Assembly (NCBI GenBank): GCA_047495785.1
Contig: JBLDXI010000031.1
Coordinates: forward strand, 1,240,001-1,304,000
Direction: 5' to 3'
DNA: 64,000 nt
Origin: Lepidodermella squamata
Taxonomy: Eukaryota; Animalia; Gastrotricha
Each line of letters opens with the position of its first letter. The stretch's first letter is position 1. The notes below the pieces were generated by a model that was not told where the DNA came from, searched no databases, and saw only the letters and a program-made list of their open reading frames with translations. This document shows, piece by piece, positions 55,855-62,466 of the stretch. Position numbers and translations under genes: made by a program.

Positions 55855-56196
55855 ATGTGTAAGTAAATTTTGCATTAGTTGGTATTGAAATTCAGTTTCA
55901 TGTTTCAGCTCACCACGGACACCACGACCCCCACCATGGCCACCACGTTCCCCCGGTGGTCCACCATGTTGACCCTCATCACATGGCTGCAGCTCACGTT
56001 GTAAGTATTATTAGTAAATTTGTTTTCATGTTTTAAATATTTTTTTTGTCAAAAGGTTCAGCACGTAATTGACCCCCACCATGGCCACCACGTCGCCCCG
56101 GTTGTTCACCACACCGTTGTTGATCACCACCACGTGGCGCCAGTTCACCACCACCACCCACCGCCCCACCATGACTCCCACCACCATCACCATTAA
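55855..56196 (+). CDS. 78-aa histidine-rich mini-protein; exons 55855-55858, 55909-56000, 56056-56196 (not in ORF track)
   Basis: ATG T|gtaagt...tttcag|CT..., then GTT|gtaagt...aaaag|GTT..., giving MSHHGHHDPHHGHHVPPVVHHVDPHHMAAAHVVQHVIDPHHGHHVAPVVHHTVVDHHHVAPVHHHHPPPHHDSHHHHH* (34 of 78 residues His). TATA box upstream; AATAAA at ~56347. Confidence 0.85.
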
Positions 56197-56595
56197 ATCA
56201 CCATAAACATCAGGTCATCGATTGTGCGGCGGATACAAATCCCGATAAATGATGTCTGTAACTGGGTCACAGATTGAACGATGAACTTGCGTTGAATTTC
56301 AACGCTTGTTGCAATAATATTATTGCTTGCACTGATTTATTCGTAAAATAAAATTTATAAAAAAAAACATAACTTGCATGGTCTTTTTGAATTGCATGGA
56401 AATATGCTCTAATATTCGCGAAAAAATCGGAGAATGTTAATTAATTAGATCTCTACCGCTGCCACCTCAATTTTAGTGTTGCATATTACGGCCTTCGAAA
56501 AAAATTAATTTAATTACATTATTTTATTTCATTAATAATGGAAAATAGTGAAACAAATGAGTAAGTAGGAGTTTTAATTTTCCAAACATTTTTCG

Positions 56596-58520
56596 CTATT
56601 TTGCCGCGTGTTTTTGCAGTCCACACGAGCAATTGATGCCTTGATGGTGCTTGGCCGTTATTTCCTTCAGACTGTACTCCTTCATCCGGTGGCCGTAGTG
56701 GTGGTAATGGGCACAATACAAGCAACAGAGTGCCTTATTAGCACAGGTTAGGCACTGCTTCATCGGCTGCTGGAAGGCCACCAGAAACGCGTCGAACGTA
56801 CACTTCGGACCGCCGTAGACGTAGTTGATCGCCAAAATGTCCCGAGCGCTTAGCCCTTGAAAAGAAAATATCAAAAAATCGATATTCAGTTGAAATAATC
56901 TGTTCGAAAATCAATTTCAAAAATTTTAGACATGCGAAATTGAAATCGAAATTTCAAAAAAATTCAAAAATTTTCAATTACCAATAAAAAAAGTAATAAC
57001 AAAATTTAGGAATTTAAATTTCTGTTTTTTAAATCACTTAATTTTCAATTTTTTTACTTACCTCCTGGACGGTTTTCATTTTTAATGAAAGGCTTGAACC
57101 AGTCATGAAAATTAGCTTTGAAATGGCGGCCACATTCGTAGTTCATAATCGAATCCGAATCGTAGTTTCCAAGCGAAGTGAACCGCCTGTTATCTCCATC
57201 CACCTCACCAGAATCTTCGCTATTAGCGTCCTTAGCAACAACTAGGTAAGCATTATCATTATTTTTATGCCCGTGGTCGAAACCAAGCGTGTGCATAGCT
57301 TCGTGTAAAATCGCGGTGAAATCTCCGAATTTGTGGTTCACATTGAACAGTTGACACCCGCCTATGCGGCCGATTTTCGAGTAAGTCTGCGAGTTGTGGT
57401 ACGTGAAGAGAACGTAATGGGCCTCGTGAAATCGCGGCGTGAAATCAATGTTAGAAACTTTCTTATTAATCTCGCCGATGACGCATTTAATGTTCCATAT
57501 TAGGTCATCTTGGTAGCAAAGCTTCTTTTTCGAAATGAGGAAGGATTCTCGATCGATTACGTAAGGAATTTTCCCACATGGCCAACAGTAAGGCGATTCC
57601 GAAGGATGCGAATATCTAAAATAAATTTGAATCGATTTCAAAGATAAACTTCGATTGTAACATTTAAATTTTAATTGGTGATCGAATTACGAAAAATCTC
57701 GGGAATTGTTATTGATCATAACAGGAAATTCTGAATTTTAAAGGTGAGCTCAATTTTTGTATGCCAAATTTTGAAATTTTGAAAAATAAAGTTGAAAATT
57801 CACGATTCAGCAGCCGGCTGATTGTATTGCTGGCAATTCTCCTCTGGGGTCAATAGCCGTTTGTAGGATAACTTTTTCGCAAGTTTTCGCTCAAATAGAC
57901 CAGACGTGTAATCGGGTTCAGGAGCTGTAGAAGATTCATCGAGTAGCACAGATGAGCTGCTTGCCGATGCCGAAAATTCATTTTTGCCTCCGATCGATAC
58001 TTCGGCGGAACAATTTCTAACTAACTTGAGTGCTGTCCAGATCTAAAAATTTTAGATTCAATTTAAACAAATTAAAATAGCAATAATTTTCAATTTTAAA
58101 GTACCATCAAAGTTTTTATCAGGCCGGCTATCCATTCGCTCAGCTTGAAGATTGCAGTGAATGCTGAAATCCAAATTAGAACTTGAAATGCTGTTTCCAA
58201 CATCCAAAATGGTGGAGTATTTTCGATAGGAACCGTTGTGCCTAACAGCCATGGTGATATCACCTCTGTGTAAACGCACCGAAAACCGGTTAAAATTGCG
58301 ATAAATATCGCCCGGAAAAGGGTGAAAACGTTGCCAATCAGCCAGATAGAAATTGGGATGAAAATATTCCTAAAAATGCTGATTATCGTAGCGATCGTGG
58401 AACTGATTGGCCAATATACAGCTAGCCTAATTGTGTCAACAATTTGCAAAATATTTGAAGGATCCAGGTTAATTGCCGCAGCCAACATTAGTTCATAAAA
58501 TTGTGGCCTCTCATATTCTG
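56596..58520 (-). CDS. Hydrophobic N-terminus + astacin-like metalloprotease + UBR-box-like zinc finger; exons 58520-58105, 58042-57804, 57615-57062, 56855-56596 (true start uncertain, possibly ATG 58749)
   Basis: Phase-compatible GT-AG joins. Astacin motifs WPCGKIPYVI, HEAMHTLGFDH, Met-turn YDSDSIMNY and GLSARDILAINYVY, followed by CTF-x13-CLTC-x6-CLYCA-HYHHYGH-x19-CSCG. Confidence 0.8.
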
Positions 58521-59291
58521 CTATAAATAATATTTTAAGGCTACCTCTCCGCAGAATGTAGTTGCTATACGAACCAGTATTACTTCATCATTCGTGCTAT
58601 AACGCGTTGCATCGGCCTTTAAAAATCGATTTTCGAATGATGATTTTCACCTGCGGGATAATAGATTTACACTAGATGTGGAAAGATCGGCCTTTCGGTA
58701 AACAAAACCGATAACATTCACGTTTTTCCTTTTCTTGTGGCTTGGCATATAGAAAAACGAGTCGAAATTCCGCAGTTTTGTAGTGTCCTTATTTCAGACA
58801 CTTTAGCTGGATTTTCCGTGTTTTTTCCTGAATTTAAATCTCGAAAATTGTCTCGCAGCATCGACAATTTATTTTCTATCTACCACCAGCGATTCACCAT
58901 TCGTTTGAAATGAACTCATTCCCATTTTCGAATAAACCAGTTATTTTATTGTTTTTACTCTATCACCTTTGAGAATTGACAGTTTCAAACATCATATAGG
59001 CAGTAATCGTCGTAACATTTTATGTAGTCATTCAGTTTACTTCTGAAGGGAGAAGGCAGGCATCACAGGGAAGAGGAAGACAACAATAAAGCAGAGCAAA
59101 TAATCCTCAAAAAATAAACACAGGAAGACGAGCTAAATACTCGGAAAAATATGAGCTATACTCCAACCGGTCACATGCGACTTAATTTTGGCACACGGTC
59201 GCTACATAATTTCAACCATCATAATAGATTTAATAAACAAAAAATACTTCAGTCCAGTCAATTTTCGTCAAGAATCTCTCGAATTATTCGA

Positions 59292-60974
59292 TTAGGTGAT
59301 GACAGTGGGCGATTCGCGTTTAAGGATCTTCGCCAAATCAGAAACGCTCAGAGCAACACGCGCCAACGGGGCGAGCATTTGCTGCGTATCAACCTGCCAG
59401 TTCGTCGACGGCTGTTCCATGTAGAGTCGAACCGTAGCCCCCGAAGACCCAGTGCCACTCAGGCGATAAATCACCCTAGCGCCATTTGCGAACATGATAC
59501 GAACACCCTGGCGTTTAGTCACCGACCCATCAACCGGGTCAGTGTATTGAAACTGGTCCATATCAACGACTTTGAAGCCGTCGAACTCCTTGCCGATCAG
59601 CTCTTTAGTTTCAATCATTTTATCGAGGCTTGCAATCAGTTTATCGCCATCGGCCGATGCGCAGTTTTCGTAGTCCCAGCGCGAGAAGTAGCAACGGCCG
59701 TGCTTTTGCCACACCTCTTCAACAATTTCTTGCACGCCATTTTTCGGCCGACGAGCCGCGAGAACGGACAGCCACGCTAGGGCAGACCAAACGCCGTCCT
59801 TCTCGCGAATGTGATCCGAGCCGGTTCCGAACGACTCCTCGCCGCACAGCGAGATGAGCCCGGCGTCCATTAGATTGCCGAAAAACTTCCAGCCAGTTGG
59901 GACTTCGAAGCATTTGATGTTCTTACTCTTCGCGACAATGTCAACAGCGCACCCTGTCGGCATGCTTCGGGCAACGCCGGGTAGACCTCGCTGCCTCAGC
60001 CAGCGAATATGCTCAGAGTTATCAGCCAGAGCAGCCAAGGAGTCACTCGGGGTAACGAAAAACCCGCTCTTACCAATGATCATGTTACGATCACCGTCGC
60101 CGTCAAACGCAGCGCCTAGATCGAACTTTCCGGTTTTCATCGATTCAACCAACTCGTGGGCGTAGGTCAAGTTCGGGTCGGGATGTGACCCGCCGAAATC
60201 AGGCAGTGGGTTACAGCGGACTGCAGCCGAAGCCGGAGCTCCAAGTGTTTCACACAGAATTTTCTTGACGTAAGGCCCCGTAACGCCATGCATCGCGTCG
60301 AATTGAACCTGGAATCCAGACGCGATCAAGTCACGCATTGCGTCGAAATCAAACAGTTGACGCATGTATTGAAGATAGCCTTCAACTGGGTCGACGATTT
60401 CAACAACCGTCGTTGAGTTTCCGGTCGAGAAGGTGTGACTACCAATTGCGTCGATATCAATGTTGACAGAGTTGCTGATCTTGTAGGTTGTAAGCTTCTT
60501 GCTTTCAGCGAAGATGCGCTCAGTTACGCTGCTTGGAGCTGGACCGCCATTGGGCGTGTTGTATTTCACTCCAAAATCAGCCTCAGGACCTCCGGGGTTG
60601 TGGCTTGCGGTTAGGATGATACCGCCATGAGTCTTGCGACGACGGATGCATTCGCTGACAGCAGGCGTTGACATCAAACCGCCAGCACCGACGATCAGGC
60701 GAGCAATGCCATTAGCAACAGCCATTCTCACGATGGTAACAGTCGCTTCGCGGCCGAAATAACGGCCATCACCACCGACGACGAGTTCGCAGGGGCCATT
60801 AGGGCACTGACCCAGGTCGCCCGCCAAGACGGTGTTGATGGTAGCTTGGATGAAGTTCTCCAAGTAGTGAGGCTTCATAAAGTGAGGTGTAGGTTTACGG
60901 AGACCACTTGTGCCCGGCTGCTGGTCGGTGAACGCAGTGGTCTGCACAGTGCTTACTTCGTGATTTGCTGCCAT
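59292..60974 (-). CDS. PGM1: Phosphoglucomutase 1, intronless, 560 aa
   Basis: PGTSGLRK, catalytic TASHNPGG, metal loop DGDGDR, sugar loop GEESFG and the C-terminal RLSGTGSSGAT...PTVIT. Confidence 0.97.
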   Translation of the reverse strand: MAANHEVSTVQTTAFTDQQPGTSGLRKPTPHFMKPHYLENFIQATINTVLAGDLGQCPNGPCELVVGGDGRYFGREATVTIVRMAVANGIARLIVGAGGLMSTPAVSECIRRRKTHGGIILTASHNPGGPEADFGVKYNTPNGGPAPSSVTERIFAESKKLTTYKISNSVNIDIDAIGSHTFSTGNSTTVVEIVDPVEGYLQYMRQLFDFDAMRDLIASGFQVQFDAMHGVTGPYVKKILCETLGAPASAAVRCNPLPDFGGSHPDPNLTYAHELVESMKTGKFDLGAAFDGDGDRNMIIGKSGFFVTPSDSLAALADNSEHIRWLRQRGLPGVARSMPTGCAVDIVAKSKNIKCFEVPTGWKFFGNLMDAGLISLCGEESFGTGSDHIREKDGVWSALAWLSVLAARRPKNGVQEIVEEVWQKHGRCYFSRWDYENCASADGDKLIASLDKMIETKELIGKEFDGFKVVDMDQFQYTDPVDGSVTKRQGVRIMFANGARVIYRLSGTGSSGATVRLYMEQPSTNWQVDTQQMLAPLARVALSVSDLAKILKRESPTVIT

Positions 60975-61759
60975 CTTGTTTAAAACAACTACAAATAAAT
61001 CGAAACAAGATATTACCGAGCATTTCCAAGCAAAAGCTTCTCACACTTGGAAGTAAAGGAACAACAACTGAAAATATGAAACTAGGGAATCAAGTGGATT
61101 ACTAGACCTAGTTACCGACAGAAAAAGTCAGCTCCGCGGTTTGAACAACATGAAAACAACATAAAAAGCACAAAAAACAAGAATGGTCGCGCCAAATCGC
61201 GCGCCAAAATATTATATTTCCGTTATTTAATTGTTAAAAAGATGGTATAAAATGCATTTTAATTAAAACTAAATAGTTTCATTTCAAATATCTGTCAAAA
61301 TATTTTGAATTTTGCCGAGCTTTGCTTTTTATTGCTTTGTTATTGATGAGTTTTCGGTTCTATTTTTTGTCTCTCAACTTATTTATCTCGTTGTAAGCGC
61401 AAGTTGAAAGTGTCGGGTGTCGGCGATATGTTAATTACTTCCAAAAGTCCCCTCCTTGCCAAAAGTGACACCCTGAAAGCATTGTTGGGCTCACTTTCGA
61501 TTGAAACATACCGTCTCGAAGTCGTGTCACGAATCACGACGTAAAATACGTAATGCGTGAAATCTCAGCAGTGTTGTAAATGATTTAGGCCAATTTCAGG
61601 GCATGAACTCTGCATGAACTCTCTTGGCAACTCCATATCGCCGCCACTGGAAAATGAATGCGTTTCCTTTGTGTTGATTGCGGTGATTGCGCAGTGATTG
61701 CGGATTTTTGTTGATGGTTCTAATTGTGATCTTTAATTTCATAGAAGCAACATTAATCA

Positions 61760-62466
61760 TGAGTGTTGCAGATGGAGAAAACTTGGCACCATTGGATATC
61801 GATGACATCGAAATCCGTCAGTTTCCCTACATGACGCCGTCTCCAAATGCCGCCCCTTCAGAGACATTGTCAAATCAGTCTCACGGTAATGTTGAAGCTG
61901 GTACTAGTTGCGAAATCTCCCCCAACGTCGAAAACAATCGCGGCAATGAGGAAACCTCCAAACTGTCCAATGTTCCTTCAGAACTCCGCAGATCTCTCAG
62001 CCTGATGCCTCCTGACATCGTTGTAGCTGACATGGCTCCGAAATTGCCGGACCCCCACATTGTACGGGGCTGCGGCACTTTAGTTGTGTTCGGGTTAAGC
62101 AATAGGTTTCCTGCCGACTTCCCGCCCAATTTAGTCGGCAAAATCGCTTCAGAAGAATACTGTGCTACTGTCAAACGAATCAATCTTTTATTATCAAAGA
62201 GCCAGAGTTCTCGGGCACGTTGGCTAATCTTTGCCTGCCTCTGCTGCTTCTGCACTCTATCCGCGTCACTGTGGCCTGTAGCCTGCCTAGCTAAAAGAAC
62301 TCGTGCCCAGCTGGAAAAGCTTCTCGATTGGGAGAACAACCGGTTGTATTATAAATTAGGTTTTCGATGGCGGCTCGTATCGTTAAGATCCGATAGTACA
62401 ATGCTCCGCGAGTACGCACTGGCCTTGGAATATCTTCCTCGCGTTTATTTACATCTACCAGAATGA
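61760..62466 (+). CDS. CHIC2: Cysteine-rich hydrophobic domain protein (CHIC1/2, Golgin A7 family), intronless CDS
   Basis: PDPHIVRGCGTLVVFGLSNRF...RWLIFACLCCFCTL...LLDWENNRLYYKLG...EYLP. Likely start is ATG 61760, after acceptor TTTCATAG at 61744. Confidence 0.9.

What the first reader, a model, noticed from the sequence alone, without database searches (positions are those of the whole stretch)
56596..58749. Membrane-anchored astacin metalloprotease fused to a UBR-box zinc finger, probably acting inside the cell
Seen in sequence: four frame-compatible exons encode a multi-hydrophobic-segment N-terminus, a Ser-rich linker, an astacin domain and CTFDAFLVAFQQPMKQCLTCANKALCCLYCAHYHHYGH...CSCG. 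The astacin domain keeps the zinc ligands and catalytic Glu (HEAMHTLGFDH) and the Met-turn (SIMNY). Established knowledge: the C-terminal pattern has the spacing of UBR-type zinc fingers (UBR4/FBXO11: CTF...CxTC...CxxC...HxxH...CDCG), which are cytosolic or nuclear, whereas astacins are normally secreted and disulfide-bonded. Also seen: the Cys positions typical of astacins (the GCxSxVG strand, here QTYSKIG; the Cys before HExxH; the terminal LYxC) and the family ExxRxDRD residues are missing. The UBR CDCG Asp is Ser. Inference: a cytosol-facing, membrane-tethered astacin with a UBR-like substrate or zinc module. I do not know this architecture from characterised proteins.
Basis: partly seen in the sequence, partly recalled or inferred. 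Interest (0 to 1): 0.85.

Follow-up and report, generated by a model that had tools for sequence, protein, structure and literature searches.

The report
Membrane-anchored astacin protease with UBR-box finger
This animal gene joins a protease of a normally secreted type (astacin) to a zinc finger that normally works inside cells (a UBR box) and to a membrane anchor; it belongs to a small uncharacterised protein family that looks intracellular, although this copy is a divergent, loosely constrained member.

Summary
A minus-strand spliced gene (about 514 aa) encodes a hydrophobic N-terminus, a Ser-rich linker, a divergent astacin domain (Pfam PF01400, 50 bits) and a Cys/His tail. It has five GT-AG exons if the ATG at 58748 is used, and four if Met37 is the start.

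The tail alone misses Pfam zf-UBR. It aligns end to end with the first finger of about 20 unnamed metagenomic astacin proteins.
- A profile of those fingers hits the UBR4 UBR box (E 1e-9).
- An AlphaFold model (pLDDT 90) matches the UBR4 box (Z 7.5, 2.1 A over 64 residues).
- On the catalytic domain alone, the window groups with this family (SH-aLRT 93).

The relatives have no signal peptide and no transmembrane segment, they lack the astacin disulfide cysteines, and 11 of 15 start with Met-Gly (myristoylation-like). A cytosolic, membrane-associated life is therefore plausible.

This copy is atypical. The Asp of CDCG that binds the N-degron amino group is Ser. HEHxRxDRD is HGHKNNDNA. Haplotype variants give dN/dS near 0.8.

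Topology and splicing are untested because no RNA data were found. Three first-reader notes on other DNA of this genome report the same architecture. A 2023 review lists ZF-UBR among astacin-associated domains without comment.

The parts
58673..58748 (-). Tentative exon A (MPSHKKRKNV...STS, phase-1 donor CTA|gtgtaa)
   Evidence: Only ATG-initiated upstream piece that joins exon B in frame. The better-looking donor CAG|gtgaaa at 58653 gives a stop. No RNA or homology support. The alternative is a start at Met37 in exon B.
58105..58520 (-). Exon B: hydrophobic N-terminal region (aa 26-164) with Met37
   Evidence: Open frame. The annotated frame is the best of six by codon usage. Kyte-Doolittle 19-residue maximum is 2.11. 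No Pfam family.
58144..58425 (-). Hydrophobic segments aa 58-75, 77-94, 96-118 and 131-151, followed by amphipathic 155-173 across the B/C junction
   Evidence: Hydropathy scan. The number of true membrane spans is not resolved.
57804..58042 (-). Exon C: Ser-rich linker / pro-region (aa 165-243), no Met, contains EENC (57830-57844)
   Evidence: GT-AG and phase compatible. Best of six frames. The E-x-C motif aligns with 7 of 15 relatives.
57062..57615 (-). Exon D: astacin catalytic domain (aa 244-428)
   Evidence: Pfam PF01400 E 3.4e-13. PDB TLL1/BMP1/astacin hits. No in-frame ATG before HEAMH, so it needs upstream exons.
57273..57305 (-). Zinc-binding motif HEAMHTLGFDH (three His ligands and the catalytic Glu); followed by GHKNNDNA instead of EHxRxDRD
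   Evidence: Read directly from the sequence. Aligned to HELGHVIGFWHEH of TLL1.
57138..57152 (-). Met-turn SIMNY with the Tyr
   Evidence: Aligned to SIMHY of TLL1/BMP1.
56596..56855 (-). Exon E: astacin C-terminal strand LSARDILAINYVY, UBR-type finger and stop codon
   Evidence: Alignments A1 and A3. 59.4 bits to the family tail HMM built without it.
56608..56802 (-). UBR-box-like zinc finger, aa 447-511. Conserved C447, C463, C466, C473, C476, H480/H481, H484, C504, C506, H511
   Evidence: Columns invariant across 16 sequences. Profile hits the UBR4 UBR box at E 1.3e-9. AF2 pLDDT 90. VIA-align Z 7.5 to 8j9q.
56620..56631 (-). CSCG: Ser505 replaces the Asp of CDCG
   Evidence: Asp in 15 of 15 relatives. 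In UBR2 (D150) and UBR4 (D1715) this Asp binds the alpha-amino group of the N-degron (PMC10687169).

Best explanation
What it is (shown). This is a real, spliced gene for a divergent member of a small, uncharacterised family. In that family an astacin (M12A) zinc endopeptidase domain runs directly into a UBR4/FBXO11-type UBR-box zinc finger.

Where it likely acts (inferred). The family is intracellular rather than secreted: it has no signal peptide, its astacin disulfide cysteines are lost, it carries a zinc finger that needs reduced cysteines, and most members start with Met-Gly, which suggests N-myristoylation and attachment to the cytosolic face of a membrane. The window's copy has no Met-Gly start. 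It carries N-terminal hydrophobic exons instead, and these most likely tether the same catalytic and UBR unit to a membrane with that unit facing the cytosol.

How it likely works (inferred). The zinc site and Met-turn are intact, so the protease probably cuts proteins or peptides at the membrane surface. In the family, the UBR box probably recruits substrates or partners by their free N-terminal residues, as UBR boxes do in N-recognin ligases.

Why this copy is different. The Asp that holds the N-terminal amino group is Ser. The astacin Glu and RxDRD after the third His are lost. Haplotype variants look nearly neutral. It is therefore a rapidly evolving paralogue whose finger probably no longer reads N-degrons in the canonical way, and it may be changing or losing function.
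For: - Gene model with GT-AG junctions and compatible phases. The astacin exon and the linker exon have no start codon of their own. The annotated frame is the best of six for exons B and C.
- Astacin: Pfam 50.1 bits; TLL1/BMP1/astacin in PDB.
- UBR box: 11 ligand columns invariant in A3. The A3 profile hits UBR4 8j9r at E 1.3e-9, FBXO11 7yrb at 3e-6, and BIG, UBR5 and UBR1. Pfam zf-UBR matches 12 of 16 tails and passes its cut-off in P0018 and in the first gene of L001. AF2 pLDDT 90. The top 17 Foldseek hits are all UBR boxes. The fold search independent of Foldseek gives UBR4 box Z 7.5, rmsd 2.1 A over 64 of 73 residues, UBR5 Z 6.2, and unrelated folds at 2.2 or less.
- Membership: tail HMM without the window 59.4 bits against 13.2 for the best shuffle. 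The catalytic-domain-only tree puts the window with all 16 family rows, SH-aLRT 93.
- Intracellular reading: relatives have max KD19 of 1.54 or less and no signal-like N-terminus; 11 of 15 start MG, 8 of them with Ser at position 6; the cysteines of TCxxF and GCxS are absent.
- Divergence of this copy: Ser505 against Asp in 15 of 15; role of that Asp from PMC10687169; 13 nonsynonymous to 4 synonymous variants over 647 to 166 sites.
Against: - No transcript evidence. No RNA run holds the locus, and the single holder is DNA contigs.
- Exon A is weakly supported. Open-frame length alone is not decisive for exon B.
- Topology is unresolved. An odd number of spans would put the astacin-UBR unit in the lumen or outside the cell.
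- On its own the tail misses Pfam zf-UBR. Foldseek E-values are weak, 0.06-0.5. The clade support of 93 comes from a quick search and is not starred.
- Myristoylation is inferred from sequence only.
- dN/dS near 0.8 rests on 17 variants and fits decay as well as rapid adaptive change.
- No activity, zinc content or binding was measured for any family member.
Confidence: 0.6

Rival explanations
1. Decaying or functionless paralogue. The gene is a recent, drifting copy of the astacin-UBR family that still has an open frame but is no longer under selection for protease or N-terminus-binding function.
For: - dN/dS about 0.8 between haplotypes, 13 nonsynonymous to 4 synonymous.
- Loss of the otherwise invariant Asp of CDCG and of HEHxRxDRD.
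- Long branch (1.25) in the tree.
- No RNA holder.
- Earlier notes report dead paralogues in the same genome (unchecked).
Against: - The open frame is intact over five exons, with all splice sites canonical.
- All zinc ligands of both the protease and the finger are kept.
- None of the 17 variants hits a ligand or makes a stop.
- The variant sample is small.
Confidence: 0.25
2. Lumenal or extracellular orientation. The N-terminal region acts as a signal anchor with an odd number of spans, so the astacin-finger unit faces the secretory lumen or the cell surface, like other membrane-bound astacins.
For: - Astacins are described as extracellular (PMC9848320).
- The hydropathy scan can be read as three spans.
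- The orientation was not tested.
Against: - Relatives of the same catalytic clade have neither signal peptide nor TM segment.
- All canonical astacin disulfide cysteines are gone.
- The finger needs 11 reduced Cys/His zinc ligands, and solved UBR boxes are from cytosolic or nuclear ligases.
- The only K/R-free loop (aa 119-130) fits a model with both ends on the same, positively charged side (inference from the positive-inside rule).
Confidence: 0.2
3. Mis-joined model. Exons A-C belong to a separate small membrane-protein gene, or are not coding, and the astacin-UBR protein is soluble like its relatives.
For: - No RNA evidence.
- Exon B has no homologue.
- ORF length alone is not significant.
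- The relatives lack such a region.
Against: - Exon D has no in-frame ATG before HEAMH, and neither has the open frame upstream of it. Exon C has no Met either, so a start must come from further upstream.
- Junction phases fit.
- The annotated frame is the best of six in exons B and C, and the introns score lower.
Confidence: 0.12
4. The Cys/His tail is a disulfide-rich extracellular module, or another kind of zinc finger such as zf-UBP or ZZ, and only resembles a UBR box by spacing.
For: Alone, the tail has no Pfam hit and only a weak SAD1 zf-UBP-like match, E 0.39. Single-sequence AF2 failed, pLDDT 43.
Against: - Family profile E 1.3e-9 to the UBR4 box.
- zf-UBR in 12 of 16 relatives.
- Fold Z 7.5 to the UBR4 box, with ZZ and B-box at 2.2 or less or far weaker.
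- Shuffle control.
Confidence: 0.04

Closest known systems
Unnamed metagenomic astacin-UBR proteins (P0007, P0018, P0031, P0037, P0066, P0085/P0152, P0169-P0175, P0224, P0225, and both genes of L001)
   Same: - Same order: pro-region, astacin, then directly a UBR finger.
- Same junction motif (F/L)SxxDxxAIxYxYxxPxC(T/S)(F/Y)D.
- Same loss of the astacin cysteines.
- Same clade on the catalytic domain.
- P0066 and P0031 end at the same point after one finger. P0018 and P0066 share the HHxxH variant.
   Different: - They are intronless ORFs on short contigs of unknown organisms, soluble by hydropathy, and mostly begin MG. Most have two or more fingers.
- They keep HEHxRxDRD and CDCG.
- The window copy has introns, a hydrophobic N-terminus, HGHKNNDNA and CSCG.
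UBR box of UBR4 and FBXO11/UBR6 (subfamily 2 of PMC10687169; PDB 8j9q/8j9r, 7yrb, 5vmd)
   Same: CTF...Q...CxTC...CxxCxxx(C/H)HxxH...CxCG spacing; three-zinc ligand set; predicted fold (Z 7.5, rmsd 2.1 A).
   Different: - Those boxes sit in giant E3/E4 ligases or an F-box protein; here the box follows a protease.
- Eight extra residues before CxCG.
- The final ligand is a His four residues after CG, as in UBR1-3, rather than the downstream Cys of UBR4.
- The amino-group-binding Asp is Ser, and the residue before the Cys is Asn, not Phe.
Canonical astacins (astacin, BMP1/TLL1, hatching enzymes; MEROPS M12A)
   Same: HExxHxxGxxH, Met-turn with Tyr, WPxGxIPY start of the mature domain, and the C-terminal LSxxDxxxIxxxY strand.
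   Different: No signal peptide; conserved disulfide cysteines absent; Glu after the third His and RxDRD absent; SIMNY instead of SIMHY; 10-residue insertion before the first beta-strand motif.
Meprin alpha/beta (membrane-bound astacins)
   Same: An astacin catalytic domain tethered to a membrane.
   Different: Meprins are type I proteins with signal peptide, MAM/TRAF/EGF domains and a C-terminal anchor, and the protease is extracellular. Here the anchor is N-terminal, has several segments, and there are no extracellular modules.
N-degron readers coupled to proteolysis (UBR1/2 N-recognins with the proteasome; bacterial ClpS-ClpAP)
   Same: Conceptually, a module that reads a protein's N-terminal residue is coupled to a degradative machine.
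   Different: Here it would be fused in cis to a metallo-endopeptidase. This is an analogy only and nothing was tested.

Membership tests
Astacin, peptidase family M12A (Pfam PF01400) | Profile match above the curated cut-off | tested here: met
   50.1 bits against a cut-off of 22.5, E 3.4e-13, covering profile positions 2-145 in exon D. The remaining C-terminal strand lies in exon E.
Astacin, peptidase family M12A (Pfam PF01400) | HExxHxxGxxH zinc motif and Met-turn SxMxY with Tyr | tested here: met
   HEAMHTLGFDH and SIMNY align to TLL1/BMP1.
Astacin, peptidase family M12A (Pfam PF01400) | Family-specific Glu after the third His, and RxDRD | tested here: not met
   HGHKNNDNA in the window; the relatives keep HEHxRxDRD.
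Astacin, peptidase family M12A (Pfam PF01400) | Signal peptide and conserved disulfide cysteines (secreted enzyme) | tested here: not met
   No signal-like N-terminus. The Cys positions of TCxxF, GCxS and pre-HExxH are substituted in the alignment to TLL1/BMP1.
UBR box (Pfam zf-UBR PF02207; UBR4/FBXO11 subtype) | Pfam profile match of this sequence on its own | tested here: not met
   No family at E<=1 or E<=0.1. Twelve of 16 aligned relatives do match (best 3.8e-9).
UBR box (Pfam zf-UBR PF02207; UBR4/FBXO11 subtype) | Homology to solved UBR boxes at profile level | tested here: met
   The A3 profile, which includes the window, hits UBR4 at 1.3e-9, FBXO11 at 3.3e-6, BIG at 3.8e-6, UBR5 at 0.056 and UBR1 at 0.18. 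The window scores 59.4 bits to the family HMM built without it.
UBR box (Pfam zf-UBR PF02207; UBR4/FBXO11 subtype) | Cys/His ligand set for three zinc ions | tested here: met
   C447, C463, C466, C473, C476, H480/481, H484, C504, C506 and H511 fall in invariant or near-invariant columns. Zinc binding itself was not measured.
UBR box (Pfam zf-UBR PF02207; UBR4/FBXO11 subtype) | UBR-box fold | tested here: met
   AF2 pLDDT 90, pTM 0.76. 8j9q Z 7.5, rmsd 2.1 A over 64 residues, with unrelated folds at 2.2 or less. The Foldseek top 17 are all UBR boxes. This is a prediction, not an experiment.
UBR box (Pfam zf-UBR PF02207; UBR4/FBXO11 subtype) | Asp of (F)CDCG that binds the N-degron alpha-amino group | tested here: not met
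   Ser505 (CSCG); Asp in 15 of 15 relatives. Role of the residue from PMC10687169.
Astacin-UBR fusion family (unnamed, defined here) | Colinear astacin C-terminal strand plus finger, and common descent of the catalytic domain | tested here: met
   Alignments A1 and A3. Catalytic-domain-only tree: one clade with all 16 family rows, SH-aLRT 93, quick search.
Astacin-UBR fusion family (unnamed, defined here) | Soluble protein with an N-terminal Met-Gly start (candidate myristoylation) | tested here: not met
   The window protein starts MPSHKK or MLAAAINL and has hydrophobic segments (KD19 2.11). Eleven of 15 relatives start MG and none exceeds KD19 1.54.
Meprin-type membrane astacins | Signal peptide, MAM/TRAF/EGF domains and a C-terminal single TM anchor | tested here: not met
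   No such Pfam domains in any exon. The hydrophobic region is N-terminal.

The most novel reading that the evidence does not exclude
Astacin-UBR proteins are the first intracellular astacins. They would be membrane-tethered (lipid- or helix-anchored) zinc endopeptidases that select substrates by their N-terminal residue through a cis-fused UBR box. That would be a ubiquitin-independent N-degron protease pathway in eukaryotes, possibly kept latent by a pro-region Cys (E-x-C) acting as a cysteine switch in the reducing cytosol.
Probability: 0.25. Interest if true: 0.85.

Novelty: new variant of a known kind. Interest (0 to 1): 0.6.

Why it matters
Astacins are textbook secreted or cell-surface proteases, and the 2023 family review describes them as extracellular proteins with a signal peptide. 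A lineage that has lost the signal peptide and the disulfides and has gained a UBR box and a cytosolic-type membrane tether would move the family into a new compartment. It would also couple N-terminal-residue recognition, so far known to feed ubiquitin ligases, autophagy receptors or ClpS, directly to an endopeptidase.

The family is small and entirely uncharacterised, so it offers a clean test case: binding of N-degron peptides, proteolysis, myristoylation and localisation can all be assayed. The window's copy adds a natural variant with a helical anchor and an altered N-degron pocket.

Tried and rejected
- Pfam, PDB phmmer, ESM Atlas and single-sequence AF2 on the tail alone gave nothing usable: no family; SAD1 zf-UBP E 0.39; no Atlas hit; pLDDT 43. 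The domain became recognisable only through relatives.
- RNA evidence: no RNA run holds the locus. The single holder X1 is DNA contigs that span the D/E intron, and no contig was laid over 57618-59000. Junctions therefore remain unconfirmed.
- Exon B: no Pfam family, Atlas scores below 0.9, and no look-alike in the scan index.
- Open-frame length as evidence for exon B: 9.6% of Markov shuffles reach 138 codons, so this argument was dropped.
- Metagenome scan with the family alignment returned mostly high-GC bacterial astacins. L003, L016 and L031 were inspected and are not family members.
- The viral-contig scan found no relative.
- The finger-only word search found only 6 proteins, all unnamed.
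- Organism: the exact PGM protein is not on record. The best PGM hits are about 56% identical to many animal phyla, with no rotifer among the best 120, so the earlier 'rotifer-like' guess could not be confirmed.
- Literature: no paper pairs astacin with 'UBR box'. 'zf-UBR' co-occurs only in the review's domain list. The phrases 'cytosolic astacin', 'intracellular astacin' and 'cytoplasmic astacin' appear in none of the 12 top-ranked papers listed.
- The donor CAG|gtgaaa at 58653 for exon A was rejected because every nearby acceptor then gives an in-frame stop.
Full report
**1. The observation**

I translated the minus strand of 56400-58900 in three frames and joined the open pieces at GT-AG sites with matching phases. 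This gives a 1545-nt, 514-aa model.

- Exon A, 58748-58673. Tentative.
- Exon B, 58520-58105. Hydrophobic region.
- Exon C, 58042-57804. Ser-rich linker.
- Exon D, 57615-57062. Astacin domain.
- Exon E, 56855-56596. Astacin C-terminal strand plus the Cys/His tail; the stop is at 56596-56598.

That makes five exons from the ATG at 58748, not four. If translation starts at Met37 (58488), four exons remain.

Exon D matches Pfam Astacin with 50.1 bits against a cut-off of 22.5. It also matches TLL1, BMP1 and crayfish astacin in the PDB. That alignment confirms three points:
- The three His ligands, the catalytic Glu and the Met-turn Tyr are kept.
- The cysteines of TCxxF, GCxS and the one before HExxH are replaced.
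- HEHxRxDRD has become HGHKNNDNA.

One detail needs correction. The terminal 'LYxC' element is not missing. Exon E begins LSARDILAINYVYGGPKC, which is the astacin C-terminal strand. So the catalytic domain spans the D/E intron, and its last Cys is also the first Cys of the finger.

**2. Are the upstream exons part of the gene?**

- Neither exon D (nor the open frame just upstream of it) nor exon C contains an in-frame ATG before HEAMH. A start codon must therefore come from exon B or beyond.
- For exons B and C the annotated frame scores best of six with a codon table trained on the neighbouring PGM gene and exons D and E. The three introns score lower.
- Open-frame length alone is not significant: 9.6% of Markov shuffles reach 138 codons.
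- Exon A rests only on frame compatibility.
- No RNA run holds this locus. The only holder is DNA contigs that run through the D/E intron.

The junctions are therefore supported by homology for D/E and by logic for B/C/D. No transcript confirms them.

**3. What the tail is**

On its own the 85-aa exon E product finds no Pfam family, only a weak zf-UBP-like PDB match, nothing in the ESM Atlas, and folds poorly.

A phmmer search with the astacin exon against 1.84 billion representatives found no close orthologue; the best hit has 83 bits and 29% identity. Among the hits, however, were six unnamed metagenomic proteins in which an astacin domain is followed by C(T/S)(F/Y)D...CxTC...CxxCxxx(C/H)HxxH...CDCG. 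Word-based searches added more. The set is now about 20 proteins, all from JGI, ENA or Logan contigs of 1-10 kb, and none carries an organism name. One 9.7-kb contig carries two such genes in tandem.

Evidence that these tails are UBR boxes and that the window's tail is one of them:
- Pfam zf-UBR passes its cut-off in P0018 (42.4 bits) and in the first gene of L001 (48.2 bits). It matches 12 of the 16 aligned first fingers.
- The window's tail aligns with these fingers from end to end. Eleven Cys/His/Gln/Gly columns are invariant. P0066 and P0031 stop at the same position after CxCGxxxH.
- An HMM of the 15 relatives' tails, built without the window, scores exon E at 59.4 bits and the finger alone at 34.1. 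The best of 1000 shuffles scores 13.2.
- A profile of the alignment hits the crystallised UBR box of UBR4 at E 1.3e-9. It then hits FBXO11/UBR6, plant BIG, UBR5 and UBR1.
- With this alignment AlphaFold2 models the window's tail at pLDDT 90.
- Foldseek's first 17 PDB hits are all UBR boxes, although the E-values are weak.
- An all-against-representatives structural search gives the UBR4 box Z 7.5 (rmsd 2.1 A, 64 of 73 residues) and UBR5 Z 6.2. Unrelated folds score 2.2 or less.

**4. Is the window gene a member of that family?**

A tree built from the catalytic domain only, with finger columns removed, covered 73 astacins. It places the window sequence in one clade with all 16 family rows and one short fragment. 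SH-aLRT is 93 from a quick search and the branch is not starred. The tail and the protease domain thus point independently to the same family, which argues for a single origin of the fusion.

**5. Where the family lives**

- None of the 15 full-length relatives has a transmembrane-grade segment (maximum KD19 1.54) or a signal-like N-terminus.
- Their astacin domains lack the conserved disulfide cysteines.
- Eleven of 15 begin with Met-Gly. Eight of these have Ser at position 6, which is the classical N-myristoyltransferase pattern. This reading is my inference from established knowledge, not a test.

Together with a zinc finger that needs about 11 reduced Cys/His ligands, this makes a cytosolic, membrane-associated location the best reading for the family.

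The 2023 review of astacins describes the family as extracellular with a signal peptide. It lists 'ZF-UBR' only in the domain key of its Figure 1, without any discussion (PMC9848320). None of the papers listed by my search uses 'cytosolic', 'cytoplasmic' or 'intracellular astacin'.

**6. What is special about this copy**

The window protein has no Met-Gly start. It has a hydrophobic N-terminal region instead (KD19 maximum 2.11), with segments at aa 58-75, 77-94, 96-118 and 131-151, and an amphipathic stretch at 155-173.

A four-span model with both ends on the K/R-rich side and the K/R-free loop 119-130 on the other side would put the astacin-UBR unit in the cytosol. Three or five spans cannot be excluded. 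I put cytosolic orientation at about 0.65, mostly on the strength of the family context.

The copy is also divergent in three further ways:
- The Asp of CDCG is Ser505, although it is Asp in 15 of 15 relatives. In UBR2 (D150) and UBR4 (D1715) this Asp binds the alpha-amino group of the N-degron (PMC10687169).
- The residue before the Cys is Asn rather than an aromatic or aliphatic residue.
- The astacin Glu and RxDRD are lost.

The second haplotype seen in the DNA run carries 17 coding differences in exons D and E. Thirteen are nonsynonymous and four synonymous, over 647 and 166 sites, which gives dN/dS of about 0.8. None creates a stop or hits a ligand. This fits relaxed constraint or fast adaptive change, and the sample is too small to tell them apart.

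**7. Mechanism**

Shown:
- The domain order.
- Intact zinc-site residues of the protease.
- A UBR-type ligand set and predicted fold.
- Family membership.

Inferred:
- Membrane tethering with the catalytic unit in the cytosol.
- Endopeptidase activity.
- For the family, recruitment of substrates or partners through their free N-terminus by the UBR box.
- For this copy, weakened or altered N-terminus recognition.

One speculative point: an E-x-C motif in the pro-region is shared by the window (EENC, 57830-57844) and 7 of 15 relatives. It could act as a cysteine switch.

**8. Context and limits**

The neighbouring PGM gene is only about 56% identical to PGMs of many animal phyla. The genome is therefore from an animal lineage without close relatives in the collection, and the earlier 'rotifer-like' guess could not be confirmed here.

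The scan's index holds three first-reader notes on other DNA of this genome with the same astacin-UBR architecture, some with a TM anchor and dead active sites. I could not inspect them.

Scans of metagenome and viral contigs added no further members.

**9. Verdict**

The architecture is not unique to this locus, and a review domain key lists ZF-UBR among astacin-associated domains. No member has been characterised, the intracellular reading of the family is undescribed in the literature I could search, and the helix-anchored variant is new.

Noticed in passing
P0001/P0002 (lamprey proteins, e.g. XP_075909979.1), best phmmer hits of exon D: Lamprey 'uncharacterized' proteins of 1000-1560 aa carry three astacin domains between armadillo-like repeats. 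They have a hydrophilic N-terminus and NWSFLG in place of GCxSxVG. This may be a second astacin lineage without secretion signals.
   Followed up: no
window 57830-57844 (EENC, Cys234) and the pro-regions of P0007, P0169-P0174: A partly conserved E-x-C motif lies 20-45 residues before WPxGxIPY in the window protein and 7 of 15 relatives. Several relatives also share (Y/F)xC(V/I)R(K/P) near residue 20. These are candidates for a cysteine-switch latency motif or a palmitoylation site.
   Followed up: partly
window 59292-60974 (-): An intronless 560-aa phosphoglucomutase-1 gene ends about 540 bp upstream of the astacin gene on the same strand. With the scan's notes of operons and trans-splicing in this genome, the acceptor at 58520 could be a trans-splice site with Met37 as the start. 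A short out-of-frame ATG (MRGHNFMN) whose stop overlaps that ATG (TAATG) precedes it.
   Followed up: partly
window 56020-56196 (+): A His-rich open frame (HHGHH...HHHHPPPHHDSHHHHH) lies just downstream of the astacin gene's 3' end.
   Followed up: no
L001:1504-4102 (Logan SRR28926453 contig, 9.7 kb, GC 0.35): Two intronless astacin-UBR genes in tandem, 100 bp apart, both starting MGSN/MGNK. The flanking ORFs have no Pfam family, and the source organism is unknown.
   Followed up: partly
window 57143-57528: The only public run holding this locus differs from the window at 11 of 386 bases in the astacin exon (about 2.8%). Elsewhere it shows paired contigs with and without variants, which suggests two diverged haplotypes or strains.
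   Followed up: partly
window 61687-62463 (+): An open frame with an Erf4 / Golgin-A7 family match (palmitoyltransferase subunit), E 5.9e-9.
   Followed up: no
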